From positions 16,306,001 to 16,370,000 of the forward strand of contig OZ281499.1 of assembly GCA_965637545.1 (NCBI GenBank): a stretch of DNA of 64,000 nt. The letters run 5' to 3'. This document shows, in pieces, positions 18,929-41,603 of the stretch. The notes below the pieces were generated by a model. It did no database searches and had not been told where the DNA came from. It saw only the letters and a list, made by a program, of their open reading frames with translations. The DNA is from Phallusia mammillata. Lineage: Eukaryota. A program made the position numbers and the translations under genes. The stretch's first letter is position 1; each line of letters opens with the position of its first letter.

Positions 18929-21900
18929 ATGTTGCTCTGCAATTATCGTGGAGTAGTTGTTTGTCTTCTGCTTCTGTGTTGTTGGGAAACAAATGGATTT
19001 GGGTACTTAGACAAGGAATTTTCGGAATTTGACATGGAGATTGACGACGACAGTTTTGACGATAATGAAATGGTGAGATTTAAATGTCCGGTGTCCTAAA
19101 TCAAGCCATTTACCTGTTATGTCAAAATGGTAATGAATTCGATTGTCAACATCTAACAGTGCTTGATTTAAGCTAATTTCAATGGAAACCAGAAAACTGA
19201 GTTTTAAACCAAGTTTTTCAGAACATTAATATTAACAAAAACGAGGTAGTTCTTATGTTTCAAATTTTATCTAAAAAGTGGCTACCTAAACATGAACTCC
19301 CAAAGCGTTTGGCGTGCCATGCAAAAATCACATTGCTTGCTAAGCTGCTTGCTAAGGTAGCATGAACTCCACAACAGTTAAAGCTTCAGTTTAGTAATTT
19401 GATTTGGTTCATGGAAGTTAACAAAGGATTCAAATTTTACTCAGGAAAGAAAATTGGGTATGGAGTCCGAAGATAATCTTCATCAAGAAGAAGACATACT
19501 GCCGCTCAATGATTTAATAGATGATGAGGAAAGAGTCTTAGCCGCGATTGACTCTCAAGATGTAGAGGAGCATTTTCTGGACAAAGATGCTGATGATGTT
19601 GAAAGGGGGGAATCAGGTGCTAGCGATGAACATCTTATGGGGAGTAAAGTTACTGAGGATAACTTTCTGGAAAATATGTTGATGGACATCTTGCGTAATT
19701 ACGATGTGAATGGAATAAGTAAGTCCTTTAATGGCGACTATGTTGAATGCAAAAAAACAAACAAAACTACAAAAATACGACACTTAGATTGTTTATATTC
19801 GTAACAAAGTGATACAAATCTTTTCACAGGAAATATGAATTAACCAATTTTGCTGTGTTGGCAACTCAACAAGTTTGAAACTGCAACACTTTGTTCCATT
19901 GTTTTTTTTTTTGTACTGTAATGACAAAGATCAACATATAACAGTTACAGGATTTATAATTGTAATTAAAACACATTCTTTGTTTCGGCAGCCACCCATC
20001 GTACCAGCTGCCCAGTGTTCGTTAAACCAACGTTGCACGCGAAAATCAACTGCGGCAAGGTCACAACTATGTTCGGCAAGATCAAGTGGTGTCACGTACA
20101 ATGCAACACAGGATACAAGTAATTTGCCCCTTGCCTTACAATTACACATGTGAATTTTCGCTATGTGGTGTTTTAAATGTCCTACATCATCGTACATACA
20201 ACTAGTTTTCATCGTTTTAACATTGGTTGAACTAACGCATTTTGTTGTTTGAGTTTAGACTCAAGCACACGTTTCCGCAATACGAACTTTGTGGAAAATC
20301 TACTAAATATCGTTGGACCTATGAACTTCGAGGGCTAATTGAGGGGACAGAACGCTGTGTTCCAGGTAGGACTTTATCAAGTGAAACGAATTTGTTTCTC
20401 AGGCATCATATAATTTCTGTATGAAACTATTTTCTGAAGTGTCACAATTTTTCTGTAGGATCCAGCTCCCAAAATTTAACAGCTTGCACAACTACGGAAT
20501 GCTTTGGGACAGGTAAGCCACAAACTTTGCAACCGCCATTATTTATTTTTACATTAAACTCTTGTACTTGTTATAATATACAACCTTTATTTGAAAAAGG
20601 AGCAAACAGTTTATTGCTTTTTAGTCATGCACAAAAGCTCAATCCGTTTCGCAGCCAAATTTGTTTAATAGTTTAAATCTAAAATTAACTTGATCTGAGT
20701 TAATATTTAAAATCTTCAAGGTTGCTTTACATCATTTAATTCCTTTCAAGTTTTAAAAATCGTTGATATTGTTTGTCTTTTACCTTTGCAGCTTCGTATT
20801 ACATGAACCGAATCGATTTTGCGGTGAATCCATGCAACGACTTTTACGACTTTGCCTGTGGACGTTGGATCAAAGAAAACCCGATTCCAGCTTTCGAAAA
20901 CAAACTCGACACGATGGCAATTGTTCGCGAAAGGGTTTTTAATAATGTCGCAGGTAACACACAGCTGCTAGGAAAATGGTACGACTACTAACACAAGAAT
21001 CAACAGATCAAAAGTTTGCTAAATACCGATAGATGGCGTAAAAAACGCATTTAAAAAACAGTGAGTCTGGGGTACGTTTAGGGCAGGGGTGTCCAACACG
21101 TGGCACGCGTGCCAAAAGTGGCACGCAGAGCATTTGAAAATTTTCTTCTGCACATTCAGATGGTAAACATGAGGATTTATCAGGCAATTAATATTTTTCT
21201 ACTGATTCTTCTCCAAATTTAGTAAAGATTATCAGTATCAAGGTTACACAAACCCACTGATTAAATTGGTCGTTTTTTGAGCCCCGTTGCAAACTATTTG
21301 TATCTTGTGTCGCATAAACGGAATAAAATGTTTCTGGAGTATCACAAACAAGTTTACTCGCATTTGACGACATATATTTTTCTAATTAATTAGGGTTTTA
21401 CATATTGGCAAAATTTTCGGATTGAGCCCATACCGTTAACACGTTTAAGACATGGTTTGGAAAAAGTACCAAACGTTGGCACGCAAGTATATTTTAAAAC
21501 CAAAATTGGCACGGTGGTGTGTTCGAGTTGGACACCCCTGGTTTAGGCAGTAAAGGAACCAGTTTTTCAGGTTCATCCAGTTGGTATTACTACTATGAAA
21601 TCTCAGTCCAACCCTAATAGCCCTTACCGAGAGCATTTCAAAAATGCTCTCAAATAAGAACTTACATCAGAGAGAAGTTTCTATTTACCGATGGCGTTAA
21701 GACCTCTGGTAATTACTTACGTGAAACAGGTGACTTTAAGGCTGTTTGATTTGAGGAGCCTTTTTATAATAAAAATATCTTTAAAACTAACTTAAAAACT
21801 TTCCTACACTTTCCCTTTCTGAAACTAATTCGTCAATGCTCTTTTTGCCATTTTTTAATATTTAGCAAACTTTGTCTGATATGAGTTATTTTTTCCCTTG

Positions 21901-24900
21901 CCTAGCAAAAAGATTTTTATTTGATCAGTACGATTTCTATTGGATCATATGTTGTTTTCTGCAGCCTTACTAGGTAAACCGTACAAAAAGGGCGAATGTG
22001 CTGCTGTAAAGAAGGCGAAAATTGCGTACAAGGCTTGCATGAACACAGGTAATAAATTTCTTATCCTTATAAAAAGGAACTTAAAGTAAAGACAAGAGGG
22101 GCTACTGACCCAATGGGTTTGTAAAAGGGAGCTGAATATGTTAGAAACTAACGTTCTAGATTGATTGACTAAGCGGTTTGATATCCAATTTGTTCGCAGC
22201 ACTTATCGACAAGCTTGACGACAAACCGCTCAAAAAGCTGCTGAAAGGTTCAAAAATGGGTTGGCCTATTGTCGACAAAACGTGGAAAACCAGTGGTTTG
22301 TTCGTCGAAAAAACGTGGGCAAAAATACGTGGCCTGTACAACAATCAAGTTTTCATGAAGGTGACGGTAGCAAGGAAAAACGGGACCCATGTTATTCAGG
22401 TAACTGTTAAGATTAAGCTTGCAAGAAAGCGGGTACAATATCGAATGTTAATTAAGCATTCAAGTTGGGATTTTTCTCGATTTTGCAACCCTGTTACTTG
22501 CAAGAAGATTTGAGTTGAGCCTGGCGATTGTTAAACAATTGTCCTGATTATACAATATCGAATGTAATCCAAGCATTCAAGTTGGGATTTTGCTTGATTT
22601 TGCAACCATGTTACTTGCAAACATAGTGTGTCGAGCCTGACTACTGATAAATAATTACCCTGTTTTTTTGATCTGATTTGAAAATCGATTGATTTGAAAA
22701 CTATTGTACACACCGAAACTGTAACTTGTGATCAATTTTCAGACATGGAATGGCGGGCTTGCACTTCCCACTTCTTACTACCTGGATGGTCGACACGAAG
22801 CTGTAAGTTTTTTAAAACAATTTGCTTTATAATCTGCCATTACCGCACAAAAAAGGTTAATATAAAATCAGATATTAGTTACAAAGGAAATTTAAATAAG
22901 TATCTAGATCAGACGTATAAGTCGGGCTGGGCTTTTCGGGCCGGGTTCGGTTCAAGGCCGATTTCCGATTTCACACCTTGTGTTCGTAATTTCAAAGAAA
23001 TGAAATTACCCAGCTAAGTACCTAGTTGCTGGACTTAACCTAATGTCCTACAGTCCCAAAATGACCCATTTAAGCCATTGTATATTATTGTCTATTGTGT
23101 ACGTCATTTTTTATTACAGACCTGACAATCAAACTTTTTAGGGCCAAAGCAGGCTCTTCAAAAGCGATTCGGGTTTGGGCCCGCTTACATCTCTGATACA
23201 GACACATATCTTTATAGAAGGTGTTTTCTAAAAAAAGTAATTGTCAAGAAATTGCCACAATTAACATGGTTATAACGCACAAGATAGTAATAGTGCCAGT
23301 TTATTTACCATGTGCCACAATAAGTTTGGCGCGCGGCAGACTTTGGTTGGTAGGCAAGTTTTTGGGCACAGGACTTTCATTAGAAACTACAGGGTATGAT
23401 TTTCTTAATTGCAGAAATTGAAAGCTTATTACGACCTATTTCGCGACATTGCACTTATGCTTGGAGGTGACCCGAAAACCGTGGCAAAAGATGTTAGTTC
23501 TGTAAAAAAGTTCGAAAGGAAGTTGGCGTATCACAAAGTTCATGACAAATATCAACACACGTCAATGACCATCAAAGAAATGCAACTGAAGATTCCTGGA
23601 GTGGTAAGAATTTGTGTTTGTTAATGATCTTGTGTTTTCATTTGGAAACAACAAGACATGATATGATTCAGTTTAATTGCTGGTAAAACGCTTTTTAAGC
23701 CTAACTAAAAAGCGTTTGTATGTTTCTTTTTCTTTGCTTTATGATTCAAAACTAAATTTACATAAGAATATCCAATCCTGTAGTTTTACGTTTTCAATTC
23801 TATATCTGTAGTTTTACGTATGTAACTTTTGTTTTCTTGTCCTTACAATTTAACTATAAAAATGAGTCAATAACACTTGTTATAGAAGGGTCTTAACATT
23901 TCCTGTGGACCAACCTTTCCAATTATTGTGTCATAACAAACATTAAAAGTCTTATTTTTAGATGAATTGGCTAAAAACTTTCAAACTCATGATTCTGTCG
24001 CACCGCATTACGAAATCAACTGTTATTCAAGTGTGGAATGTGAAATTCATGCAAAACCTTCAAGCTCTAATCAAAAGCGGTGGCAAAAGGTACCGAATGC
24101 GTTCAAATTCCCGCACGTTGTACGGCATTTTCTTGTATTTTCATTTGTTTGAAAGGACTGTGCAAAACTACATCATATGGCGACTGGTGAAACACCGAGT
24201 CAAGAATCTGAGTTTGCGATTCCAGAAGCGATACTTGATGTATGAGAAGGCGCTATACGGGACTCGATCTCTTACATCTAGGAGTTATAAATGCTCTTCT
24301 GAGTTAATTCTATCCATGAAGGGAGCTACAAGCAAATTGTACATCGACAAGCACTTTCCAACATCTAAAAAGAAGGCCGTAAGTATTGTTTATGCTCCTA
24401 AAATGTTGGTTAACTTCTAAATGAGTTGCTTACACTATTTTTAAATAGACCCACAAACCACAATGCATACGTATGAAAATAGAAGCAAATATGAAAAAAA
24501 TAAGTACAACTTATTGTCAGTTGGTACAGGTCATTATTTCACTAATGATGACAATAGTTTTGTCGAAACGTTTGAATAATAAAAGTGATATGTTTTTTGC
24601 AACTTTAATGTTTATTTCGCTTTTAATTAAACTGCGTTTAAGTCCGTTTCATGTGCAACTAAATTAGTAAAAAGATTTCCTCATATTTTTAATGTGCCCT
24701 CAAGATCGGTGCTACAGTCAGAATTAGCACTATTCCAAAAAACTAATAACAAAGCAAAAAACTACACGTTCTTACACGTAATATTGAAACTACTCGTTAA
24801 AGCACATACAAATATTAGTAAGTCTGAAAGTAACATTGGTAGATAAATTCTTGACTAGGAATTGTGAGAATTGTTGACTTAAACGAAGCAAAGTTTAACT

Positions 24901-27737
24901 GGTGCGGTATACATATTTTTTACAGGCGACAGAGTTGTTTACTTATATCCGAGACGGATTTATTCAACTTCTCCACACCGAAGTTACTTGGATGGACAAG
25001 AAAACCAAAGATTACGCAATAAGAAAAGCTAATGCAGTCATTTATGATATCGGTTACAATCCGAAAATTTACCAGAACACTACCTATCTCGACAATCAAG
25101 TCTCACACGTGAGTATGGAGTATCCATAGTATCCACAAACCTCCACAAAAAACAAAATCCGGTTTCGGTGGTACTCAATAGATGTTTACAGTTTGCTTTC
25201 ATCAGGGTTTATAATTATAGCCTACAGTTTCGAAAGCCCGTTATAACATATTAATAAATTAAAGGAAATGTAGTTTAGTAATTAAACTATCCACCAAATG
25301 TACAAACAGTTTATCAACTACAAAACGTTTATGTGTTTCAAACTAAGATTGTAGTGTTGATTCCGTTTGTCAAAAAGCTAATAGAGCTCATTTGAAAAGT
25401 GCACCCTATTTCCACTTGGTAAAAGTTTTAACAACGTACATTCCATTGCATTTCTGTTTATAGCTACGAGTCAATGTTGGTGATTACTTTGGCAACACAT
25501 TGCGTGCTTTGACAACCATCGCACAAAACAAGTTTAAGCTGATCGGCCAAAGTTACGACCCAAAATTGGTTCCATTCACCTACAGACCAACCATGGTCAA
25601 CTCATTCTACAGCAACTCATACAACCGCATCAGTAAGTAGTCAGTGGTCCCAGTTGATTTCATTCCAGTTTCAAGTCTTCTGTCGGTAGCTTTTGTTACA
25701 TGTATTTCTTGCCTAGAAAGTGACATCAAAATTAAAAGAAGAGGGTAAACAAAGTTAAATTTTCCTATAGTAAACCAATTTGGTGATCAGGTTAATGAAA
25801 AGTTTTATAAACTGTATAGAACAAACTAATACACATACCTCTCTTGTAAACAGCATATTTTTACAGTGATTCTGGCAGCTATAATGCAATACCCGATGTA
25901 CTGGGGGGATACGTTTCCACGGTAAGTAAAAAATAATGAATTTATTTGATGTCGCCGTTGGACCTGTGGTCTTTAATACCCTAAAGTTTGCCTAAACGGA
26001 AAATACCGTTAAAGTATTGTGCCAGTCAATAATAGTTATACATCAATTTCTTACACCCCTGTTATATATGTATTTGTTTAAAGGGTTTTTCAATACGGCG
26101 CCATGGGCAGCATTGTGGGTCACGAGCTTACGCACGGTTTTGACGACACTGGTCGGCTGTATGGTGTGCACGGAAACAGATACAACTGGTGGTCAGCTGA
26201 GGCTGTCGCTGGGTTTAGAAAGCGATCTGGTTGTTTGGTAAACCAGTACAACAACTTCTATTCAATGGAGGCTGGATTGTATGTAAGTGAAGGCATGTAG
26301 GCGATCTGCAGTTAAATATTTAGTGTAACATAAAATACGTTAAAGTAACTCCTGTTTAAGCAACTAAAAGCGTGTAACTGTGTGATGCTTTTTCCTATTT
26401 TAAATAGTTGCTGTTTTAAAAAATACAAAAAAATTTACTTTTTCAACATGTGCATTCCTTTACTATTTTTGTGATGCACTTGGCAAAATTTGTGTAGCCC
26501 GTGTGGGCATTTGAAGTTCTATTTGGAACTTTTGATGTTTTATTTGGAAAAACATTTGGAGTTGCCACAATGCTTTGCAGCTTAATGGAACCAGAACTTT
26601 GACTGAGAATATTGCGGATAATGGGGGAATCAGAGAGGCCTACGTGGTGCGTATGACTTTGTGTAGTAATCAATACAGCAGTTCGAGTTAATGGCAACTG
26701 TTTAAACATCTGTTTTGTGAAGGCACTTTTCGGTTATTTTTTCATGTGTAGCATTTTTACCCCTAAGCCCCGCTTCTGCTTGTGGGCGAGAAACTAGTTG
26801 TAGAAAAGCTGTTTCAATTTTTTAGCAACTAAAGTGGTTTCATTGTCAGTTTATCTGTCTGTGCTATTTTAAGATTTGTGAAAACCGCGACATCGATTTA
26901 GGCTTAACACAACTTGATTAATCTTGTTTTGTAGGGATATCATATGTGGTTGAAAGCAAACGGACTGACTGGAGAGCAAATTGAACCAACAACTGGTTTT
27001 ACGAACGATCAGATGTTCTTTATCGGGGCTGGTGGTGTACGTGAAGTTGTACAATTTTTAACTGTTTTAGGCGAAGCGGCAGTTGGGGCTAAAACCTAAT
27101 TTTTGTACAAATCCCAAACTAGGCCCACAAATTGTTGAAATTATGACACAAAGTGGTGTCAGGCCTGAATTAAGTTCGTTTTAATGGTAGGTTAAGTTTA
27201 AAACCCGAATTACAAGTCACATATTTTACTAAGTTACTTTACGCTTAAATCAATACTTTACTGATAAAAGTATGAATAATATTTCTTACAAATAAATTTC
27301 CAGTCTATTTTTTGTTTACTGCTTTGATTTTTATTACAGTATCGATGCGGCCATTCAACACATGCGAGCGCTGTACATGAGGTAAATACCGACTCTCACA
27401 GCCCTTCGAGATTCAGGTGAGAATATAACCTAAGGAAAACATCGTGTTACAAGCCAACTTCTGAAATGGTTGTTAAACATTAACTGACGTTATTCTCTTG
27501 ATCGGTTCGTTTGAATGTCTTCTGGCACGATAGCAACCCCAAGTCTTTCTCATTCCGAAGTGCTTGCACATGTTTGTTTAGTGCTTTTGTTGTGCACCTA
27601 AAATTAAAGTACCTATTACCAATATTTATTTTTTTAGGACAGTCGGTTCCTTACAGAACTTTGACAAGTTTGCGGAGGCATTTAACTGCCCATTAGGTTC
27701 TTACATGAATCCGATAAAGAAGTGCATCATTTGGTAG
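18929..27737 (+). CDS. PHEX: PHEX-like M13 zinc endopeptidase, paralog 1 (signal peptide + acidic segment + Sushi-like module + M13 domain); 20 exons, 900 aa
   Basis: Exons 18929-19072, 19445-19718, 19992-20118, 20259-20365, 20459-20512, 20792-20953, 21965-22048, 22200-22399, 22743-22802, 23415-23603, 23962-24089, 24156-24378, 24926-25108, 25464-25632, 25867-25921, 26084-26282, 26581-26646, 26935-27036, 27340-27416, 27638-27737 total 2703 nt in frame. Motifs: CTTTEC, NPCNDFYDFACGRW, VNSFY, HELTH (26121-26135), [17 protein letters not shown], terminal KCIIW*. Family assignment is certain; PHEX subfamily assignment is by eye and the symbol means PHEX-like. Confidence 0.93.
21084..21540. mobile_element. 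hAT (Charlie-like) MITE, 457 bp, in intron 6 of M13 paralog 1
   Basis: Perfect 14-bp TIRs caggggtgtccaac / gttggacacccctg. 8-bp TSD gtttaggg / gtttaggc. Subterminal tggcacgc repeats at both ends. Confidence 0.9.
22434..22639. repeat. Diverged direct repeat, ~90 bp x2 (period 117), intron 8 of paralog 1
   Basis: tacaatatcgaatg...aagcattcaagttgggattt...ttttgcaacc.tgttacttgcaa...gagcctg at 22434-22523 and 22551-22639. Confidence 0.9.
22910..23195 (-). mobile_element. Older copy of the hAT MITE family at 43164-43475, opposite orientation, intron 9 of paralog 1
   Basis: Its reverse complement begins cagagatgtaagcgggccc and ends ccgaacccggcccgaaaagcccagcccgacttatacgtctg, matching both ends of the 43164 copy. 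The TSD is degenerate (atctagat / atacagac). Confidence 0.75.
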
Positions 27738-29682
27738 ATTCTGCGTCAAAAATGATTCACACCCAAGTTTGGCACGTGGTTTTAAAGGTGCTACCAGAAG
27801 AGTTGTACAGCGAGTAAAAAAAGAATAAGAATAGCAGTTTATGTGCATTTATATTTATGTTTGTTTGCAAAGTAGTTAATCAAGCTGAGGAGCATTATTG
27901 TACTGTTGTGTTTGTGTTGCAATTGGGCTTTGTGATCGGATCGTCAAAATTTTTGTTCGCTAATTATCATTGGATTTTACATGTACAGTCACTTTAGTGT
28001 AGTAATGTCCAAACTTTTTCGAGTGCAAGATTTCAGTCAAGGTTTTGCACTTGTCTTGAGATTTACCAAAGTTGGGATTTATCGCTATTTGAACTTGCTT
28101 GACTTTGTTAATTTATGCCCGGTCTTATTTAACGTCAATTTTTTCGTGTACAACATTACACACAGATAAAAAAAAAACACAAAGCGACGTACTGTCGAAG
28201 CTGAGAACCACTGCTTTATTGCAAAATTACATAACCAAAATATTTTGTCACTTATACTAAACAAATAAAAGCTTGTACGCCTGTCTTCTGCTTATTTTGG
28301 CTTCCATACTGTCAAAATAAATGACGGAAAGCAAACCAATAAAACTCCTTCAAATTTCTTCCAATTTATGGGTAAAACGCCGTGTTGGAACGGATGTCAT
28401 ATGATCCATAAGCTTTTTTAAATACCGTTGTGAAACTTTGAATTTCAATGATTTATTTTATTGATTTCCATAATCACGTAAAAATGCATTGTGAAGTGAT
28501 GTTTTTGACAGTCGCATATGTTTTCTGTTGAAAAGTTTCCATGTAATATCCAAGACTCGCAAATATCCAAGCCTAGACCTTATCTGAACTATATGAGATA
28601 AAATTTGGTGAATTTTGATTTGCTTTATTGAGCACTGTTGTTATTTTCGGGTTTAAGAAATACAAAAAGTAATACTTTGCCAAAGTTGAAATTTCATAAT
28701 TTAGTTGTTATTACAGACTTTAAAAGTAAAGTGTCAGAATACTAAATCTATAAAAACGTCCAACATTAAAATGTGTAACATACATGTTACAATTCGCTAC
28801 GCGATGATTTAAAGTTTAGATAAGGGTTTGTTTGAAATCAGAAAGCAGTAAATTACCACATTCATACATTCCCACGCATTGTCTGTGGCCAGCAGAATCC
28901 AAAATAAATCAGGCGTTTATCAATAGTGGGAAATCAGTTGCAATTAATCGTTTACAAAGTCCCATCAAATTCCTTGTACACAGATTACACTCTGTGTTGC
29001 TATTCCAAACGCTTGAAACAGCTCAAATTGCAACGAGGCTGTGTTAAGTATTGTGTAGGAGTTAAATAAGGTTGATCCGCTTCCTTTCCCTGCAAACTGG
29101 CGGGCTGTGGGCAACACCAGCTATTTTGCCAACCCATATGGAAGTCCGAAGCGCCGACGTACTGTTTTACAGTCACGTCTTTTTGAACAGGAGTGACTCG
29201 CTGGAGATGACTGTTACTTATCTAACACCGGCGCTATTGTTTCGCTTGATGCAGGCTTAACGGACTTTTGAAGAAAAGTTTTCTAGATTCACATTATGGT
29301 GCTTGAATGTTTGGCGTTATAGCTGTTATGAACACAATAAGTAACAATATTAGGCAGTGCTTTTTGAGGGATACCAATTTTTGTGAAAGAAAGTTCGATT
29401 TGCATGGTGTAGGCTCTATGGTCAAGCCTAGTACAACCTAGATTGTCAGTTTTTAATGTTTCTTAATAAATAGTTACAAAACGATAAAAAAACGCATAAA
29501 GAAAGATTTTAGGCATGCGCTGTTAGCTGTATAGAATATTAGTTTTCAAAATTGCGCTTTTATAGTAACAGATCACATTGCGAAAAGACGAATCGTGTAT
29601 TATCACTATTAATACAAACCCATGAAAGCTACCTCTGTTACATAAAAGATAAAGAAGTGCTTATTTGTTCAACAGGGGCGTC

Positions 29683-32600: not shown

Positions 32601-35600
32601 ACATCGATTGTCCCAACACACTATAAGCATCTTTTGCCCAATGGGTGTCAAATATGTACGCAGCGAGACAAAGCTGTTTGTGACTCAAAATTTCTCATGT
32701 AGCTTATAATAGATTTAATAAGCATTTCATTTGTGTCTTAAAACTGACGTCATAGTTTGCGACAAATGTTATAAATATATTTTGCTTGTGTTTATCAATT
32801 TGGTAGCTCCACATTTTGTGCGTGGATGCTAATTTCGTGACTTGTTAACGATTTAATATGTGATTATTTAATAATGCAATGACTTAGCGCACAATAAACG
32901 CTTAAATTAACTTGTGATTCAATGGGTTATTCATCTATTATACCAAAATCATTATTTTCTTATTGTTCGTTTCCCTAGACATTTGTTTTCAGACATTTTG
33001 AGATTCAAGTGGTATTGGGGAGTTTGACCCCTGTTCCAAACAGATACATTTGTTTAGCTATAGGTTCGGCGACCCTTTTTTAAACTGTAGCTGGTATTTT
33101 CTGCTTTGTTGTAGATGAGCCTACATATTTGGGTGTTTTCTTAACGTGCTATCAAAATAGATGCTGCCATTTGTTGTGACTAGTTGTATAGTTTCAACTC
33201 ATATATGTGTTTGTTTTTAGATTGAAACACGCCTACCCGCAATACGAACTGTGCGGGAAAGCCACAAAATATAGATGGACTTACGAACTTCGAGGGCTAC
33301 AATCCGGCACAGAACGATGCATTGCTGGTTTGTGTGACTTCTAGCTGGTTTGTGTGACTTCTAGTCGTTGCTTTTTCGGAATTTATTACATAAAAAAGTT
33401 TTTACTTAAATTAGCCCCCCTATAGACATTTTATTGTCAGAATATAAATTAGTGTTTCAATTTTTGTAACAACAACATTTTATCCATGCAAACTCGTAGG
33501 AACTGGAACCACCACCAACGCATCTAGCAATGTCTGCACAACAAAGGAGTGCTTTTCCACAGGTAAACAAACAAAAATGTAAGCAATTTTTCAGTATGTT
33601 TGTTAAACAACTATATTAACTTTCAGCCGCGTATTACATGAACAAATTCGATTTTTCTGTCAATCCTTGCAACAACTTTTTCGACTTTGTTTGTGGACGT
33701 TGGTTGAAAGAAAATCCGATTCCTCCTTCCAAAAGTCATTTCCTTACCTACACAACAATTCGAGACCGTGTGATTTACGACATTGCTGGTAAAAAAATCA
33801 GTTATTGTGTAAAATTTTGCTGGTGTTTAATGTTTTTTGCTTTTAAAGTGATTTGGTGTCCTTACAGTTTACGTCTAATGACAAAATTGATTGTTATGGT
33901 TATAAAAAACAATGTTGAGGTCTTATATAAAATATTACTTATACTTCTTGCAGATTTACTTAATCTTCCAAACAAGTTGACAGATTGTTCCGCTGTGCAA
34001 AAAGCTAAAGTTGCATACAAAGCTTGCATGAATACAGGTAAGGATTGCCAAAGAATGTGCCGAACATTGCTTAATACCAACACGTTTCTAATAGTTTAAA
34101 TCTATCTACGTTCTTGCTGAAACAGTATTTTCTCATAGGGCAACTTATACGTCTCCCTAGGTAGCGTACTAACCAGGACCGAAAACGTTGGTTGGCTAAA
34201 GAACCAGTATCAAGGGAGCAAATACTGTTTCAATAACATGAATAGCATTAACAACCTATTTTGTTCCTTTAGCTTAATCCTATCAAATTTGTGGATAACA
34301 TTTACACATTCAAAAATGGGGTTTCTTTACATTTTAGCATTGATTAATCTGCTTGACGCGAATCCATTGATGAAGTTTTTGGAGAAAAAGTTGGCTTGGC
34401 CTATAATTGACCCAACGTGGGATCCAAACACGTTGTTTGTCGATAAAACTGTTGCCGAGCTTCGTGGTTTATACAACAACCAAGTTCTCCTGAAAGTAGT
34501 GGTGCGAAAACAGAACGGAGTCCATGTGTTACAGGTATATTCTAGTTGTATAATATTTCCAAATTTTACAAATGTATTTTTGCTAAGTTATATTTGAGTA
34601 AAAAAGTATTTGCTGAATTACAAGTATTTTTGGCTAAATTATGTTTGAACAAATCTCTGTACTGATAAAGTACCAAAATCGTCTATAGGTGATATCATAT
34701 ACTACTTCAAAAAAGATAGATCAATGTTTGCAAATATCTGTAGTACACAAATGTAGATTGTAGTGAAAAATCTCGAGGACAGATTGTGACCCTGTTTATG
34801 TAAATCCGTTACATCCGGCATTGCACAACACATTGTTGCACCCCGTTCGGCGTTCTACTTTCCCTTCCTGATGCGTAACTGACATGCTGTTGCTCTAAGA
34901 ATCCACAATTCAAAATCATTAATCATTTACTTTGCCTTTGTTTGACTACATTCAACATACGCTGTAGAAACTGACTGTAAAACCGGTCTAGGTTGCAAAA
35001 TTTAAGAAAATATTCTTATAAGGTAAAACATCAACATTGACAAATTATTTTGTAGACTTGGAAAGGAAAGATGGCACTTCCATTTGCTTACTACCTGGAA
35101 GAACGTTATGCTGATGTGAGTTCTTTGTATTTCTTCGTTAGATGTACCGAAAAAGCAAATTCATTTCAAAAGTTAGTTTCATGCACACAAAAATTTAGGG
35201 TCATTTTGGTTGGCAATGGCTTTGCTAATTCATTACCACTACACAGCAAAACTATTTTGAAGAAATGGAACAAAACTTTACACATAAAATCCTCCATATC
35301 AGGAGTCTGATCGTTTCTGGAGCCCTTATTTTGGAATATATGATTTTTTCCCCATCTGGTGCTCTGAACTATAGTACAATTTTTCTATTCCAAACTAATT
35401 AAACATCTTTCGTTTAGAAACTGAGCGCTTATTACGATTTAATGCGAGATACAGCTCTTATGCTGGGCGGCGACAGAGAAACTGTCGATCGGGATGTTCG
35501 TGACGTAAAAATATTTGAAAAGAAGTTGGCCTATCATAAAGCTTACGACTGGGACTATTACACTTCCATGACTCTCAAACAAATGCAAGACGAAATTCCC

Positions 35601-38600
35601 GGGGAAGTAAGCATTTGTTTGTTTTTTGCCGGACAAATTGCCAAGTTTTAATGTCTGCCTTGTGATAGACATTTTTCTGTTTGTATATTCGTAAAAACCT
35701 ATTGTCGTTTTATGAAGTTGGAGAGTAATTTAACGGTTACTTTTTAACAAATCGAACATTTTCAGCATAGCATTTGTAAACTGGCGCAAAACATTGGTTT
35801 AGATACCAAACAGCATTGGTTTTTATTCTCAGGTTATAACAAAGCATAACGTTTTTTTATGTTACCACTAAAACTAAACTGTCGATGCGAACATTTCTTT
35901 TTAGTTGAACTGGCTGACAACTTTCAAGCTTATGATCTTGTCTCATCCCATTAGCGAATCAACCGTTGTGCAAGTATGGAATGTAAATTATCTCAAAAAT
36001 CTTCAGGTATTGATCAAGGAAGCTGGAAAAAGGTAAACCATTTTTCAAAAAAACAAAAAAATCCATTTTTAAAGGTTGGTTTGTTAAAGCTTATAATATT
36101 ACTTACAGCTCCTGATTAACTAATACAAAATAGCCTCATTAAAAATAATACAAATCCACTGTAGTATTTAGCCATTGTGGTACACAGATGGCCCGATTTT
36201 GGTAATAAAAGCGAACAAGGATTTTGTTGTTTAACGTAAGAAACTAGGAAAATCTACTAACACCATACCTCACAGCAGACCCACATTTAGCTAATTTTCG
36301 ATAGTTGTCGTAAAGAGCACTTTATCTCTAACAATGCTCATGGTTAGGGCTATTGTGGTTGTGATAAGGTATTAGCGTTCAAAATTAAATAAAACTAGCA
36401 ATAGGACTTAGTTTCTATAATGATTTTTTTAAACCTACTTCATATCCGCAAAATAAAAAATTCAGCTCTTCGCGCCACTTACCGAAAATTACCTAAATGT
36501 GGGTCTGTCGTGAGGTATGGTGTTCTAGCAGCTCTACCAAGAAACTATATGCTTGTGATTTTAACCGTTGTATACAAGGGTGTTGCCTTGAGCTTTTGTT
36601 GCAAAATTACCTAATGAAAGTAAAAGTTAAAATGTGGATCTGCGGTCTTGTGCATTTGCGGTATACCAGCATTCTTACAAATAAGCACATGTATATAATT
36701 GTACTTGAAACTCAAACGAATTCATTAACTTTACAGGACAGTGCAGAACTACATGATGTGGCGTATAGTGAAACACAGAATCAAGAACCTGAGCTTAAGG
36801 TTTCAGAAAAGATACTTGCGGTACGAAGAAGCGATGGTGGGTAAAAGATCGCTTCCAACACGAAAGTACAAGTGCGCTGACAACATGATTTACACGATGA
36901 AGGGAGCTACTAGCAAACTCTTTATCGACAAATACTTTTCGCCAGCCAAAAAGAAGGCGGTAAGTTACACACAGTGTTAGAAAACTTTTGTACTCTCTTA
37001 CGGATGATCTTCAGAATTAAGTTTCAAAGTTAAGTACGATGAATCATAGTCGCCAGGCCTATATTATAGGAGTTGTACCGAGTCAGCTGGTCTCTTCAGT
37101 TCATGTTCATCTTAAGTATGATGAAGAAGTGTTTTCTTACCGCCTAATCATACCAGCTGGATTGTGTTTTATATATAGTTTTGACATGGTCAGTAATTGG
37201 CCAGTACGACATTGGTTAAGCACTGATTGCGTGTTTATGTCTTTACAGCTGTAAAATCAATGTTACTGTCAGAATTATAGAAAATGGCAAGAAAACGTTG
37301 CAGAGTAGCCTACTTTGGCTATTCGACTTTTGTCTAATAACTAACGCTGTTTTACGTGGTAATTTACAAACTTTAGGTTGGGCAGAAAATAGTTCTTGAA
37401 CCTCCCAATTAACTAAAAAGAACATTTTTGTCCTCCTAAATAAGTTTGAATCGAAAACATCCCGGGTATACAAAAGAAGTTACCAAGGTATACAAAAAAG
37501 TGAGCTCGGTTATATTAACACACCAAGGGTCTCTACCAAGTGATCTACACAAAATGGATTCGCATACTATTTAATCGCATACATTATACTGATCCATTTA
37601 CCAACGCTATATTGCCGCTAGACATTTGATCTCGCTTCGCCCCCGTTTCCTTATCACTCTGCCCTACGCGTTCAACATCCTTCTTATCGTAACAATCAGT
37701 TGGTGAACTCTGTTGACAGGACCAATATTTTGAAAAGCATGTGGTCAGAAAGCACAACACACTTCCAAAATTTGCTTTCGCTAAAAGCAATGCGATCAAA
37801 GCCTTGTTGGCAACAAAAGAAATTATTGTTTGAATTACGCGCAACAAACAACCCCTCAGAAGTAAATTCGATTTTTGGGTAAGTTAAAGCCCACAAAAGT
37901 TAAAATCTGTTCATACTCAAATTTAAAAAGGCATTAGTTTAAAAAAAAACATATTTGCAGTAGACTTTGATACACAAGTAAAAATAATATAGTCTAATAT
38001 GGATTGCAAGTGGTTTCGAATTGAGCCGTACCTGAAAGTAAAAGCACAAAACCAGGCCCAAGGCAATTGAAGTAGGCCCCAATCAATTCGGTTCTATTCA
38101 AACTTGAATGAAAAAGCTCACCTAGATTTACAACTCGAAAACTTATGTAAAATATAATATTATTCTTTGCGTTTAAAGTCAATTGTGACAACAGCTTGAC
38201 GATGTGTGTTACTTCACAGGCGCTCAGATTGTTTAACTTCATCCGAAAAGGTTTTATTCACCTTCTGGACTCCGAAGTTACATGGATGGACAAGGCCACA
38301 AAGGATTACGCAAAACGCAAAGCCCTCGCAATTACGGCTGATATTGGTTACAACCCAAAACTTTACAAAAACACAACTTACCTTGATGAACAAGTATCTC
38401 ACGTAAGTTGAATGCATAAGCATATACCTTGCACAAAACTGGTTACTGATGTGTACTGCATCAGTGGTCGGCAACCGCCGGTCAGCGGCCCGGTGCCGGT
38501 CTGCGAGGAGTTTGTTACCTGGCCATATATATTTTCAGGCTAAATACTTTAAAACATTTTGCCCATGTATTCCGGGGATAATAAACTAATTTCGTCGTTT

Positions 38601-41600
38601 TGCTGAATATTTTTAGCTTTTTGAACGCCGGACCGCGATAATTTTTCAGGTTAAAAAACGGTCCTTTTTTTAAAAAAAGGGTTGCCGATCCCTGTACTAC
38701 ATTATCAAAGAAATATTTGCGTTTTGAATGCCCAGACCGGTTCCAAATCCTAAAATAACGCCTGGCCTTTGCATAGTAGGGCTGCTACGTTTAGTAATGG
38801 TTTGCGGTAAAAGACATAATGAAACTTCCATTCGTAAAATAGTAGGTTACCCCCTAAAAATCATGATACAGCATAGCTTCAGTAAAGACAAAAAACGCAA
38901 CCTTGGTAGGCTATACTCGACGTATCTGGTCAGGCAAATAGGTCAAATATTACAGATTTAAGTACGTATATAAATAGTCAAGAAATGTTAAATATATTCA
39001 AATTCTATGCTTTTGCGTTAACGTTCTCAATTATTTCTACAGTTGAAAGTAGAAAAGTGGGATTACTTCGGTAACACACTTCGTATACTGACAAGCATCG
39101 CACAGGATAAATTTAAACTCATTGGAAAACCTTATAATGCTTCCATTGATGCTTTTACCACAAGGCCATCGATGGTGAATGCCTTCTACAGTCCAACACA
39201 CAACAGAATCAGTAAGTTAACTACACAGATATATGTAAATTTTGCAATTCATTTGGTAGGTCATTTGAAATGCACCTTATTGAGTTTAATTTTACATTGG
39301 TCTTTACTGCGTCCTAAGTGTAATGAAGGTACATGGTCTGGGCGACTGGCAATTAACTGTTTCAAACATTTAATGGAATTTATCTATTTTCAATCACGAC
39401 CCGCTCAACGTTTTCAGTTCTTGATGTGTATGAAAATGTTTTAGTACGCTTGAAACATATAGCTTGAGCATATGTAAATTAGGTTTTGAATATTTATATT
39501 TCTTTCTTTGTGTAGCTCTTCCCGCTGGTGAGATGCAATATCCGTTTTACTGGGGTGACAAGTTTCCAAGGTGAAGAAATAATCAGCTACTGTCGTTTGC
39601 ACTTAATCTCTTTACATGCTATTAAAAATATACTTTCAAAATACTTTTCAAAATTTTATTTAACTTCATGTAAAAACAAGTACATTAAAATCAAAATTAT
39701 AACCTCCCAGTTCATTCCTTTGGTGGATGAAGACTAAATAGCCTTATATCTATTGATTTAAGTTCAAAAAACGTCATTTTGTCCTTTAGCATCTTTAGTA
39801 TCTGTAAGCAAGTGTAAACAATTCATTATTATGAAAAACAACTGTAACATTTTTATTGCATAGAACGTTTAAGTCAAACAGGCCAGACTTAAATTAAACA
39901 GGCGAGACTTAACCAGTCTTTACGGTCGATGCTTGTACAGATTCAAACCATTTTCACATCAACGCGTTTTTTTAGTATGTTTCAGTTTGGTGCCATTGGA
40001 ACCATTCTAGGGCACGAGTTAACTCATGGCTTCGATAACACTGGTCGTCAGTACGATTTGTATGGACATCTGAACAATTGGTGGAGTGCAGCCTCTTTGG
40101 CGCAGTTTAAACAGAGGACATCTTGTATGGTGCATCAGTACAGTAACTTCTTCTCTGAGTCAGCCGGCATGAACGTAAGTGTATAGCTGCTAATGGCTTG
40201 AGATAAAGTGGTTGAAGGCTTATTTATCATGATAAGCTCCAATCCTTTGTATGTCGCACCCTAAACAGTACAGGACATAAATGAATAAGTTATAAGTTAG
40301 CTGAACAATAACAAAAATAACTTTAAGAAGTAAAGTCAAAACATGTTTGCCAAAATCACCAAATTGTTTTTCAGCTAAACGGAGCTCAAGAACTAGGAGA
40401 AAATATTGCTGACAACGGTGGCATTAGAGAGTCATTCAAGGTATCTTGTTTATTCTATACTGCGTGAATTTGTTATGTGATATAACATTTATGTCCTTTA
40501 CACTTATGTCTTTGTTTCAGGGTTATCATCTTTGGCTGAAATCAAAAGGCCTAACCGGAGAGCAAATTGAACCGACGACCGGATTTACAAATGATCAAAT
40601 GTTTTTTGTCGGTTTTGCGAACGTAAGTAGCGTACTCGGTGATACAGTTTTTTGAAGTTTATATAGGTACTATCTCAAAATGTACTAAATAAGGACAGTA
40701 CTTGCAGGATTCGGTGACATCAAAAATTGAACAACAAAAATACATCTAAGATAAACTCTTGGGTTCATTTGTTTACTGTCGAAAACGGGTTTCGTTCCAA
40801 AATATGTAGCATGTTGATAAAAAGCTGGCAAAATAAACGTTAAAAGTGTCGTAAACGCAATCCACTTTGACAAGTAATTTTTTGAGTTTTTACCTGTGTT
40901 TTTTAAAAATATCATACAATGATTTCTTTTCGAACATTTCCTCAAAAATATGTTACCAGGTTCGATGCGGGAAAGCGACACATGCTGGCGCTGTTCATTC
41001 TATCGTAAAAGACGTGCACAGTCCAGGTCGATTCAGGTGAGGCTAAAGATATAATCTGCCATTAAACCTAATGAGTAACTACATTGTCTAAAAGTGCTGT
41101 GAACACAACGTGCTTGATTTAGTGGTTTGCCGAAAACTTCAATTTACTTTTTTAGTTATATTGTCAAAAACGCAACTTTACCGACACCTTTAACATTACA
41201 AAAACACAGCTTAGTTATTTGTCCTTTTGTTGATAATCATCCTGACTAAAAAGTAAAGGCAAAGAGGTGTGAATTAATCCCACAACTAAAGAATAATCCA
41301 CTACCTTCTTAAAAACTTATTTGATTTTAAAATCCTTTCTGGACATCTTTGCAGCACAATAATAAATCAGTGTTTTTACTGAAAAACTTATTTTTTTTAT
41401 TGTTATTTCTAGTCTTTAAAGCCATGAATGTAGAGAAAATGTGTTTCTGAACTTCACAACTGAACATATAAGTACGTAACTAACCAATACATTACACTTA
41501 CAGGGTAATAGGTTCTTTGCAGAATTTCGCCCAGTTCTCCAAAACTTTCAACTGCCCGTCTGGTTCCTACATGAACCCCGTAAAGAAGTGTATTATTTGG

Positions 41601-41603
41601 TAA
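29683..41603 (+). CDS. PHEX: PHEX-like M13 zinc endopeptidase, paralog 2 (signal peptide + acidic segment + furin site + Sushi-like module + M13 domain); 20 exons, 923 aa
   Basis: Exons 29683-29820, 30847-31177, 31433-31571, 33221-33327, 33500-33562, 33627-33788, 33954-34037, 34338-34534, 35056-35115, 35418-35606, 35905-36032, 36737-36959, 38220-38402, 39043-39211, 39516-39570, 39976-40174, 40375-40440, 40521-40622, 40960-41036, 41504-41603 total 2772 nt in frame. 15 of 20 exons have the same length as in paralog 1. Motifs: [37 protein letters not shown] (HELTH 40013-40027), [31 protein letters not shown]. The symbol means PHEX-like. Confidence 0.94.
31951..32185 (+). mobile_element. hAT (Charlie-like) MITE, 235 bp, intron 3 of paralog 2
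   Basis: 15-bp TIRs caggggtcggcaacc / ggttgccgaccactg (one mismatch). Perfect 8-bp TSD cactagaa (31943-31950, 32186-32193). Confidence 0.93.
33324..33363 (+). repeat. Exact 20-bp tandem duplication spanning the exon 4 splice donor of paralog 2
   Basis: gctggtttgtgtgacttcta x2. GT donors at 33328 and 33348. Confidence 0.95.
38462..38694 (-). mobile_element. Second copy of the 31951 MITE family, inverted, intron 13 of paralog 2
   Basis: TIRs cagtggtcggcaacc / ggttgccgatccctg. TSD tactgcat / tactacat. Its reverse complement aligns end to end with 31951-32185 (shared aaattagttt.t.at.ccc, atacatgg.caaaatgttttaaa, aactcctcgc). Confidence 0.9.

What the first reader, a model, noticed from the sequence alone, without database searches (positions are those of the whole stretch)
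18929..41603. Tandem PHEX-like endopeptidases rebuilt as secreted proteins with a novel N-terminal architecture
Sequence: both genes encode signal peptide, acidic segment, six-Cys module, then a complete M13 domain with all catalytic residues (HELTH, ENIAD, H-S-P, final R). Paralog 2 reads [41 protein letters not shown] and FANVRC. Established (recalled): human PHEX has [41 protein letters not shown] and YAHVRC, whereas neprilysin/ECE have PAGILQ and AQVWC. PHEX is a type II membrane enzyme that prefers acidic P1' residues and degrades acidic mineralisation inhibitors (osteopontin, ASARM peptides). Inference: an apparently bone-less invertebrate has duplicated a PHEX-type enzyme, released it from the membrane and fused it to its own polyacidic segment and an interaction module. 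This could be an undescribed extracellular system for acidic matrix proteins, mineral or metal handling, or defence.
Basis: partly seen in the sequence, partly recalled or inferred. Interest (0 to 1): 0.88.

Follow-up and report, generated by a model that had tools for sequence, protein, structure and literature searches.

The report
Tandem secreted PHEX-type peptidases of a tunicate
Two neighbouring genes of a sea-squirt-like animal encode intact PHEX-type zinc peptidases that carry a signal peptide, a long acidic stretch and a small Sushi-like cysteine module instead of the usual membrane anchor. The layout is real and shared by other tunicates, but it is already in public gene models and PHEX-like genes in Ciona were reported in 2008.

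Summary
Window 18929-27737 (G1, 900 aa) and 29683-41603 (G2, 923 aa) are two same-strand, 20-exon M13 metallopeptidase genes. Each encodes a short N-terminal hydrophobic leader, a 26-37% Asp+Glu segment, a six-Cys module on two exons, the canonical CxxxxC mini-exon, and a complete Peptidase_M13_N + Peptidase_M13 ectodomain with all catalytic motifs.

PHEX affinity is supported:
- In an ML tree the tunicate proteins join vertebrate PHEX (94/88), and amphioxus joins next (100/99).
- An AU test rejects a neprilysin/MMEL1 placement (p = 0.007).
- Three PHEX-only sequence signatures are present.
- ECE, ECEL1 and KEL could not be sampled.

The "novel architecture" claim is overstated. NCBI models from Ciona intestinalis (926 and 840 aa, also in tandem), Styela clava and Clavelina lepadiformis have the same layout. 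Bland et al. 2008 already placed two Ciona genes with PHEX. I found no paper that describes the N-terminal layout.

The Cys module is probably CCP/Sushi-like, but this is not proven. G2 is the conservative copy. G1 has changed substrate-pocket residues but keeps the catalytic ones.

Verdict: a lineage-specific pair within a tunicate-wide, uncharacterised secreted PHEX-clade subfamily. Interest is moderate.

The parts
18929..27737 (+). Gene G1: 20-exon PHEX-clade M13 peptidase, 900 aa; the divergent copy
   Evidence: Spliced model with GT-AG junctions and phases identical to G2. It aligns end to end with tunicate proteins P0074, P0075, P0077 and P0078.
29683..41603 (+). Gene G2: 20-exon PHEX-clade M13 peptidase, 923 aa; the conservative copy
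   Evidence: It is 52% identical over its full length to Ciona intestinalis P0074.
18929..19072 (+). G1 exon 1: signal-peptide-like leader plus the first conserved acidic island
   Evidence: Hydrophobic run of 12 residues at positions 8-19. The donor at 19072 and acceptor at 19445 are in phase 0, as in G2.
29683..29820 (+). G2 exon 1: signal-peptide-like leader (an A-K-A site before I-D) plus the first acidic island
   Evidence: Hydrophobic run of 13 residues at positions 6-18. There is a stop codon just upstream in frame, and the first ATG is at 29683.
19445..19718 (+). G1 exon 2: polyacidic segment ending in a conserved amphipathic helix island
   Evidence: 33% Asp+Glu, net charge -31. The helix island is conserved across tunicates.
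30847..31177 (+). G2 exon 2: polyacidic segment with a KKR site before the helix island
   Evidence: 37% Asp+Glu, net charge -36, dibasic sites at residues 131 and 162.
19992..20365 (+). G1 six-Cys module on two exons (19992-20118 and 20259-20365), flanked by phase-1 introns and split by a phase-2 intron
   Evidence: It is 75% identical to the G2 module, the best-conserved part of the protein.
31433..33327 (+). G2 six-Cys module on two exons (31433-31571 and 33221-33327); an RMKR site sits immediately before the first Cys
20459..20512 (+). G1 mini-exon (phase 1-1) encoding an N-glycosylation sequon and the canonical M13 CxxxxC start
   Evidence: Found in the former 'intron 4' and matches the ICxTPEC segment of the tunicate orthologs.
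33500..33562 (+). G2 mini-exon (phase 1-1), same content as in G1
39516..39570 (+). G2 exon with the PHEX-type AGEMQ motif (Glu at the position of neprilysin Ile558) and the FYWG one-residue insertion
25867..25921 (+). The same exon in G1, changed to L-A-A-I-M-Q (Ile restored, Pro and Gly lost)
39976..40174 (+). G2 zinc-binding exon (HELTH)
   Evidence: Pfam Peptidase_M13 E = 7.7e-18. Best PDB matches are ECE-1 and neprilysin.
26084..26282 (+). G1 zinc-binding exon (HELTH)
   Evidence: Pfam Peptidase_M13 E = 2.1e-16.
40375..40440 (+). G2 exon with ENIAD (third zinc ligand Glu)
26581..26646 (+). G1 exon with ENIAD
40960..41036 (+). G2 exon starting V-R-C (Arg at the position of neprilysin Trp693) and holding HSPGRFR
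27340..27416 (+). G1 exon starting Y-R-C and holding HSPSRFR
18900..18928 (+). Pyrimidine-rich tract ending in CAG, 7 nt before the G1 ATG (acceptor-like)
   Evidence: Read directly. The same spacing is seen in G2.
29660..29682 (+). Pyrimidine-rich tract ending in CAG, 7 nt before the G2 ATG (acceptor-like)
   Evidence: Read directly.

Best explanation
The window comes from a tunicate that is not Ciona, Styela or Clavelina. It carries two tandem paralogs of a tunicate-wide subfamily of PHEX-clade M13 zinc endopeptidases.

Shown:
- Both genes are intact 20-exon genes and both show far fewer non-synonymous than synonymous differences (purifying selection).
- Both keep every catalytic element: the HExxH and ENxAD zinc ligands, the substrate-aligning N-A/S-F-Y motif, and the HSP...R transition-state residues.
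- Their ectodomains group with vertebrate PHEX.
- The membrane anchor of ordinary M13 enzymes is replaced by a short leader, followed by a roughly 120-145-residue acidic segment with three conserved islands, then a 71-residue six-Cys module.

Inferred:
- The leader is a cleaved signal peptide, so the proteins are soluble and secreted.
- The acidic segment is disordered.
- The module is a CCP/Sushi-like binding domain, inserted as a phase 1-1 exon cassette, that directs the enzyme to a partner or matrix.
- G2 keeps the PHEX-type pocket (Glu at neprilysin position 558, Arg at 693), so it probably keeps PHEX-like subsite preferences.
- G1 has changed the pocket (Ile at 558, Tyr-Arg at 692-693, Ser in the NAF motif), so it probably cleaves different substrates.

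The two copies are each other's closest relatives. This means either a duplication separate from the one in Ciona or old gene conversion.
For: Gene models and junction phases.

Pfam M13_N and M13 in single exons.

Full-length alignment to Ciona, Styela and Clavelina proteins with the same layout.

Careful ML tree: tunicates + vertebrate PHEX 94/88, plus amphioxus 100/99, G1+G2 100/100.

AU tests: tunicates with NEP/MMEL1 rejected at p = 0.007; G1 with the Ciona upstream-type lineage rejected at p = 2e-10.

Bit scores of the Ciona savignyi relative P0001: 480-524 to PHEX, 355 to neprilysin, 348 to ECE-1.

Signature columns.

Leader length and position against true anchors, and the acidic composition.

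Selection: pN 0.17-0.22 against a saturated pS of about 0.75; the module is 75% identical between the copies.

AlphaFold2 of Ciona P0074: the ectodomain has pLDDT above 90 from about residue 255, and residues 1-250 are below 50.

Sushi lead: atlas feature scores 0.91-0.92, with Sushi or Sushi_2 families in about 96 of 100 hits for two different orthologs; weak CD46 and E-selectin profile hits; CCP proteins among the top, non-significant, Foldseek hits.

The same tandem layout in Ciona.

Published placement of two Ciona genes with PHEX: PMC2259306.
Against: - No signal-peptide predictor was available, so cleavage is inferred from length, position and small residues at -3/-1.
- ECE, ECEL1 and KEL sequences could not be fetched, so my tree does not test those placements; only bit scores and the 2008 paper do.
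- Support for the tunicate + PHEX branch is good but not maximal (94/88), and the tunicate stem is long (0.60).
- Pfam Sushi does not hit the module, and the AlphaFold2 model of the module is unreliable (pLDDT 53).
- There are no expression data for this species.
- Specificity is inferred from two pocket positions only. I recalled which neprilysin residues form the pocket; I checked only the numbering.
Confidence: 0.8

Rival explanations
1. The hydrophobic N-terminus is an uncleaved signal anchor. On this reading the proteins are still type II membrane enzymes, with a long acidic stalk and a Cys module between the membrane and the catalytic domain.
For: All classical M13 enzymes are type II. 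Ciona P0077 has an 18-residue run. G1 has an in-frame upstream ATG at 18809 that would add about 40 residues.
Against: The runs are 11-14 residues in five of the six tunicate proteins and start at residue 6-9 with no cytoplasmic tail. Small residues at -3/-1 (AKA, CQA, VVA, VQA, SNA, TNG) are followed at once by acidic residues. True anchors in the same alignment are 20-27 residues long and start at residue 22-75. G2 cannot be extended upstream because of a stop codon, and both genes have an acceptor-like CAG 7 nt before the chosen ATG.
Confidence: 0.1
2. The genes are not PHEX orthologs. They would be a fast-evolving tunicate branch of another M13 group (ECE, ECEL1 or KEL-like) that converged on the PHEX motifs.
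For: ECE, ECEL1 and KEL are absent from my tree. The single catalytic exon scores slightly higher to ECE-1 than to neprilysin in the PDB. The tunicate stem branch is long.
Against: Over the whole domain, ECE-1 scores 348 bits against 480-524 for PHEX. No ECE appears among the best 120 hits of the relative P0001. Three independent signatures, including an insertion, are shared with PHEX and amphioxus only. Bland et al. 2008, with all groups in the tree, placed Ciona Cin3 and Cin4 with PHEX and another Ciona gene with ECE.
Confidence: 0.06
3. G1 is a decaying or non-enzymatic copy (a binding protein or pseudo-enzyme) rather than an active peptidase with a new specificity.
For: G1 has the longer branch (0.37 against 0.16). 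It has changes in conserved substrate-contact motifs: NSFY, LAAIMQ, GAGGYRC.
Against: All 20 exons are open with canonical junctions. The zinc ligands, catalytic Glu, HSP...R and the C-terminal CxxW are intact. pN is far below pS in both M13 halves.
Confidence: 0.07

Closest known systems
Tunicate 'PHEX' / 'PHEX-like' gene models (Ciona intestinalis P0074 926 aa and P0077 840 aa; Styela clava P0075; Clavelina lepadiformis P0078; Ciona savignyi P0001, P0079); Cin3/Cin4 of Bland et al. 2008
   Same: The same order of parts: leader, acidic segment with the same conserved islands, six-Cys module, CxxxxC, M13 ectodomain. They are 48-52% identical over the full length. Intron positions are conserved in the N-terminal part. 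Ciona has the same tandem, same-strand layout.
   Different: They are from different species. G1 and G2 are sisters and do not pair one-to-one with the two Ciona lineages. The N-terminal layout of these models is not discussed in any paper I could find.
Vertebrate PHEX (phosphate-regulating endopeptidase, X-linked)
   Same: Sister group in the tree. The ectodomain is 35-39% identical. Shared signatures: AGE(L/M)Q, FxWG and VRC. All catalytic residues are shared.
   Different: PHEX is a type II membrane protein with a 20-21-residue anchor and has no acidic segment or Cys module. Its known substrates (ASARM peptides, PMC3579870) belong to vertebrate mineralised tissue.
Amphioxus PHEX-like protein (P0160)
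   Same: It joins the PHEX + tunicate clade (100/99) and carries the same three signatures.
   Different: It keeps a classical 23-residue anchor at residues 75-97 and has no acidic or Cys module. The secreted layout therefore arose in tunicates.
Soluble M13 enzymes: mammalian SEP/NL1/MMEL1 and Drosophila NEP2
   Same: These are M13 ectodomains released from the membrane (PMC2259306).
   Different: They belong to other M13 clades, lack the PHEX signatures (for MMEL1 and the Drosophila row), and have no acidic segment or Cys module.
CCP / Sushi modules, especially six-Cys forms such as selectin CCPs and the Sushi_2 domain of beta2-glycoprotein I
   Same: About 70 residues, beta-rich in the model. 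The Cys spacing and a Trp between the last two Cys fit the CCP pattern. It is a phase 1-1 exon cassette. Language-model features point to Sushi.
   Different: There is no Pfam Sushi or Sushi_2 hit even at E = 10, no significant structural or profile match, and the disulfide pattern is unknown.

Membership tests
Peptidase family M13 (neprilysin family) | Peptidase_M13_N plus Peptidase_M13 domains | tested here: met
   Pfam hits from single exons: M13_N E = 9e-15; M13 E = 8e-18 (G2) and 2e-16 (G1). The models align over the whole ectodomain with 50 other M13 proteins.
Peptidase family M13 (neprilysin family) | Zinc ligands HExxH and ExxxD (ENIAD), the substrate-aligning N-A-F/Y motif, the HSP...R residues, and the C-terminal CxxW | tested here: met
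   All are present in G2. In G1 all are present except that NAFY reads NSFY.
PHEX clade of M13 | Groups with vertebrate PHEX in a phylogeny of M13 ectodomains | tested here: met
   UFBoot 94 / SH-aLRT 88, and 100/99 with amphioxus. AU rejects NEP/MMEL1. Caveat: ECE, ECEL1 and KEL are not in my tree; those placements are covered only by bit scores and by PMC2259306.
PHEX clade of M13 | PHEX-specific sequence signatures (Glu for neprilysin Ile558, Arg for Trp693, one extra residue after the FF motif) | tested here: met
   G2 has all three. G1 keeps the Arg and the insertion but has Ile at 558.
PHEX clade of M13 | Type II membrane topology | tested here: not met
   There is a short leader at the extreme N-terminus instead of a 20-27-residue anchor behind a cytoplasmic tail. 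This was a heuristic test only.
PHEX clade of M13 | Preference for acidic P1' residues; cleavage of ASARM-type peptides | not testable with these tools
   This is a biochemical property (Campos et al. 2003, as cited in PMC2259306; PMC3579870).
CCP / Sushi domain | Match to the Sushi or Sushi_2 sequence profile | tested here: not met
   No Pfam hit for the module exons or for four orthologous N-termini at E up to 10. PDB profile hits to CD46 (E = 0.26) and E-selectin (E = 3.2) are not significant.
CCP / Sushi domain | Small beta-sandwich fold with four framework Cys and a conserved Trp | tested here: inconclusive
   The Cys/Trp spacing fits. The AlphaFold2 model is beta-rich but has pLDDT 53. 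Foldseek gives no hit below E = 2. Atlas features score 0.91-0.92, mostly to Sushi clusters.
Secreted protein with cleavable signal peptide | n-, h- and c-regions with small residues at -3/-1 | tested here: met
   Hydrophobic run of 12-13 residues in G1 and G2, with TNG and AKA before the acidic segment. The same pattern is seen in four orthologs. No dedicated predictor was available.

The most novel reading that the evidence does not exclude
Tunicates turned the ancestral chordate PHEX into a self-contained secreted system. The acidic N-terminal segment would act in cis as a pseudo-substrate, pro-region or cation- and matrix-binding tail for an enzyme whose pocket favours acidic residues. The Sushi-like module would target it to a partner. 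That would make this an early, pre-bone form of the PHEX / acidic-protein relationship, with G1 and G2 as a specificity-diverged pair.
Probability: 0.12. Interest if true: 0.8.

Novelty: new variant of a known kind. Interest (0 to 1): 0.42.

Why it matters
PHEX is a disease gene whose natural substrates and origin are still debated, and it is usually discussed only in relation to bone.

- PHEX-type pocket signatures are already present in amphioxus and tunicates, so the enzyme type predates mineralised skeletons. This was known in outline since 2008.
- Tunicates alone exchanged the membrane anchor for a signal peptide, a conserved acidic segment and a probable Sushi-like module. This has not been described in print as far as I could find.
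- The G1/G2 pair is a natural experiment. G2 keeps the PHEX pocket, and G1 has reverted the Glu to Ile and changed neighbouring residues. Comparing them could show which residues set the acidic P1' preference.

No function has been shown, and the gene models are already public, so the value is as a lead rather than a discovery.

Tried and rejected
- **Module search.** A search limited to the Cys module of P0074 returned only P0074 itself. It missed even the known orthologs, so the blank says nothing.
- **Module structure.** AlphaFold2 of the helix-plus-module region gave pLDDT 53. Foldseek against the PDB gave no match below E = 2, so I make no fold claim.
- **Full-length model.** The model of P0074 gave no confident contact between the N-terminal parts and the catalytic domain (pLDDT below 50 up to residue 250), so nothing can be said about docking or auto-inhibition.
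- **Missing groups.** I could not obtain ECE, ECEL1 or KEL sequences.
- **Other copies and RNAs.** There is no third M13 copy or fragment elsewhere in the window and no Rfam family in the window.
- **ASARM-like idea.** I rejected the idea that the acidic segment is ASARM-like: it has only 12 Ser+Thr in 122-143 residues.
- **Furin site.** A furin site as a general activation step is not supported. RMKR is present only in G2; the orthologs and G1 have at most single or dibasic residues there.
- **Shared duplication with Ciona.** At the sequence level this is rejected, although the gene order is the same.
Full report
**What is there**

The window is AT-rich eukaryotic DNA (GC 0.34-0.40) with short exons. 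Comparing stop-to-stop reading frames of 18.5-29.6 kb with those of 29.6-42 kb gave 18 collinear conserved blocks on the + strand. For each gap I listed GT/AG pairs and kept the pair with the same phase and the best joined peptide in both copies. Every junction came out canonical and identical in phase between the copies.

Exon 1 was joined in the same way. Aligning the first models with tunicate proteins showed a missing segment. I found it as a small phase 1-1 exon in the former intron 4 (G1 20459-20512, G2 33500-33562).

The final models are:
- G1: 18929-27737, 20 exons, 900 aa.
- G2: 29683-41603, 20 exons, 923 aa.

Neither has an internal stop. No further M13 copy lies in the window.

**Domain content**

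Single exons already hit Pfam Peptidase_M13_N and Peptidase_M13. The catalytic exon matches ECE-1 and neprilysin chains in the PDB. Both proteins have HELTH, ENIAD, HSPxRFR and a C-terminal CIIW. G2 has VNAFY and G1 has VNSFY.

**Relatives, and whose genome this is**

An exhaustive search with a G1 exon pair found Ciona savignyi P0001 as the nearest representative. Searching with P0001 returned these proteins:
- Ciona intestinalis 'PHEX' (P0074, 926 aa) and 'PHEX-like' (P0077, 840 aa).
- Styela clava 'PHEX-like' (P0075, 884 aa).
- Clavelina lepadiformis 'PHEX-like' (P0078, 920 aa).
- About a hundred vertebrate PHEX proteins at 480-524 bits.
- Only after those, a hemichordate and a horseshoe-crab neprilysin-like protein at about 400 bits.

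G2 is 52% identical to P0074 over its full length and 48% identical to the Styela and Clavelina proteins. The window is therefore from another tunicate.

All four full-length NCBI models have the same order of parts as G1 and G2: a leader, an acidic segment with the same three conserved islands (one just after the leader, one I/S-P/S-D/E-x-x-L motif, one amphipathic helix), the six-Cys module, the CxxxxC motif, and the ectodomain.

Exon ends of P0074 on its own genomic locus fall at the same places as in G2 in the N-terminal part, including the split inside the module. In Ciona the 840-aa gene lies directly upstream of the 926-aa gene on the same strand. That is the same tandem layout as here.

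**Is it PHEX-type?**

A careful ML tree was built with these settings:
- 55 rows and 739 columns.
- Model LG+C20+F+G4.

The groupings were:

| Grouping | Support (UFBoot / SH-aLRT) |
|---|---|
| Eight secreted-type tunicate proteins | 100/100 |
| Those plus a third Ciona savignyi protein (P0048) | 100/99 |
| That set plus 14 vertebrate PHEX | 94/88 |
| All of these plus the amphioxus PHEX-like protein | 100/99 |

The rest of the tree holds neprilysin, MMEL1, and hemichordate, echinoderm, mollusc, arthropod, priapulid and nemertean M13 proteins. Forcing the tunicates to join neprilysin/MMEL1 costs 59 log-likelihood units (AU p = 0.007).

I could not fetch ECE, ECEL1 or KEL sequences, so my tree does not test those placements. 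As partial cover, P0001 scores 348 bits to ECE-1 and 355 to neprilysin in the PDB, against about 500 to PHEX. In addition, Bland et al. 2008, with all groups present, placed two Ciona genes (Cin3, Cin4) with PHEX and others with ECE and NEP (PMC2259306).

Three alignment features are shared only by vertebrate PHEX, amphioxus and the tunicates:
- Glu in A-G-E-L/M-Q where all others have Ile.
- One extra residue giving F-x-W-G.
- Arg in V-R-C where all but two other rows have Trp. The two exceptions are a mussel and a partial, frame-shifted whale model.

By the numbering checked against the 541-VNAFY-545 motif, these are neprilysin positions 558 and 693. I recall both as S1' pocket residues; I did not verify that here.

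**The two copies**

G1 and G2 are sisters (100/100). Holding G1 with the Ciona upstream-type lineage is rejected (p = 2e-10). So either the duplication here is separate from the one in Ciona, or old gene conversion erased the signal. The shared gene order keeps the second option open.

| Region | Identity, G1 vs G2 | pN |
|---|---|---|
| Acidic segment | 40% | 0.385 |
| Six-Cys module | 75% | 0.17 |
| M13 ectodomain (N-terminal / C-terminal half) | 64.3% / 63.7% | 0.21 / 0.22 |
| Overall | 60% | 0.244 |

Synonymous sites are saturated in these regions (pS 0.72-0.79), so the duplication is old and both copies are under constraint.

G2 has the shorter branch and keeps all PHEX signatures. G1 reads L-A-A-I-M-Q, G-A-G-G-Y-R-C and N-S-F-Y. 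Its pocket has changed but its catalytic residues have not.

**The N-terminus**

The uncharged hydrophobic run is 12 residues in G1 (positions 8-19) and 13 in G2 (positions 6-18). It is 11-18 residues in the four orthologs, always starting at residue 6-9. In each case it is followed by small residues at -3/-1 and then by acidic residues. In amphioxus, vertebrate PHEX, neprilysin, hemichordate and mollusc proteins the run is 20-27 residues and starts at residue 22-75. This is the pattern of a cleaved signal peptide, but no dedicated predictor was available.

G2 cannot start further upstream, because a stop codon precedes the ATG at 29683. G1 has an upstream in-frame ATG at 18809. However, both genes have a pyrimidine tract ending in CAG exactly 7 nt before the chosen ATG. 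That would fit a 5' intron or a spliced-leader acceptor.

The acidic segment is 33-37% Asp+Glu here (26-34% in the orthologs), Ser-poor, and predicted disordered in the Ciona ortholog (pLDDT below 50). An RMKR site directly before the module and a KKR site before the helix island exist in G2 only. Orthologs have KR at the second place in two of four cases. Convertase cleavage is therefore possible for some members but is not a shared feature.

**The six-Cys module**

The spacing is C-x13-C-x12-C-x3-C-x15-C-x21-C in both copies, and the orthologs differ by at most one residue in the first gap. The module has a G-Y-K/H-L motif after the fourth Cys and an invariant Y/H-R-W between the fifth and sixth. 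It is encoded by two exons that together form a phase 1-1 cassette.

Evidence for a CCP/Sushi assignment is mixed:
- Pfam finds nothing.
- The AlphaFold2 model is beta-rich but unreliable.
- Foldseek gives no significant hit, though complement regulators, CD25, E-selectin SCRs, C1s CCP and a GABA-B CCP are among the top rows.
- A profile search of the PDB gives CD46 at E = 0.26 and E-selectin at E = 3.2.
- Atlas language-model features give 0.91-0.92 for two different orthologs trimmed to the module, with Sushi or Sushi_2 clusters making up about 96 of 100 hits. The tool rates this as a lead whose shared-feature count (165-173) is near its same-family range.

I read the module as probably CCP/Sushi-like (about 0.7), and do not treat this as established.

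**How it most likely works**

A secreted, soluble zinc endopeptidase of PHEX type acts on extracellular peptides or proteins. It carries a conserved binding module next to the catalytic domain and a long acidic, motif-bearing tail. G2 likely keeps PHEX-like subsite preferences, and G1 likely has a shifted specificity. The genes, motifs, clade and conservation are shown. Secretion, the module's fold and role, and the specificity are inferred.

**What is known already**

- PHEX-like genes in Ciona: Bland et al. 2008.
- A PHEX-like gene in sea urchin: Square et al. 2016.
- Soluble M13 enzymes in other clades.
- PHEX preference for acidic P1' residues and ASARM as a substrate.

Four literature searches for PHEX together with Ciona, ascidian or tunicate found no description of the signal-peptide / acidic / Cys-module layout. 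The 2008 paper does not mention a signal peptide.

**Verdict**

The PHEX affinity and the loss of the anchor are supported. The claim of a newly built architecture in this animal is not, because it is a tunicate-wide subfamily already present in public annotation. The first-stage notes on this stretch about the furin site, the Sushi-like module and the G1 pocket agree with what I tested.

Noticed in passing
window 18900-18928 and 29660-29682: Both genes have a pyrimidine-rich tract ending in CAG exactly 7 nt upstream of the start codon. It looks like an acceptor site for a 5' UTR intron or for spliced-leader trans-splicing, which is common in tunicates.
   Followed up: partly
window 18809-18928: There is an in-frame ATG 120 nt upstream of the G1 start, in the same open frame. 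It would add 40 residues. It lies upstream of the acceptor-like CAG and has no counterpart in G2 or the orthologs.
   Followed up: partly
window 24090-24155: G1 intron 10 is only 66 nt, in frame and free of stops, so retaining it would insert 22 residues into the M13_N domain. The G2 intron at the same place is 704 nt.
   Followed up: no
L001 1-20759 (Ciona intestinalis AP043578.1): The 840-aa PHEX-like gene lies directly upstream of the 926-aa gene on the same strand. This gene order mirrors G1-G2, although the tree does not pair G1 with the 840-aa lineage.
   Followed up: yes
protein P0048 (Ciona savignyi, 689 aa, N-terminally truncated model): This is a third tunicate member of the PHEX clade. 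It carries the AGELQ and VRC signatures, sits on a long branch and is sister to the secreted-type group. It might be the copy that kept the membrane anchor, but its N-terminus is missing.
   Followed up: partly
protein P0185 (Glandiceps talaboti) search: A hemichordate neprilysin-like protein scores as high to vertebrate PHEX (about 620 bits) as to vertebrate neprilysin (about 600). Best-hit names such as 'MMEL1' or 'PHEX-like' are therefore unreliable for invertebrate M13 proteins.
   Followed up: no
G2 residue 325 / G1 residue 301 (window exons 33954-34037 and 21965-22048): G1 and G2 have an extra Cys in the M13_N domain, in the T/G-D/E-C motif. Among the aligned tunicates only Clavelina shares it. 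It leaves an odd number of Cys in the ectodomain.
   Followed up: no
window 1-64000: No Rfam family reaches its gathering score anywhere in the window, and there is no long open frame outside the two genes.
   Followed up: yes
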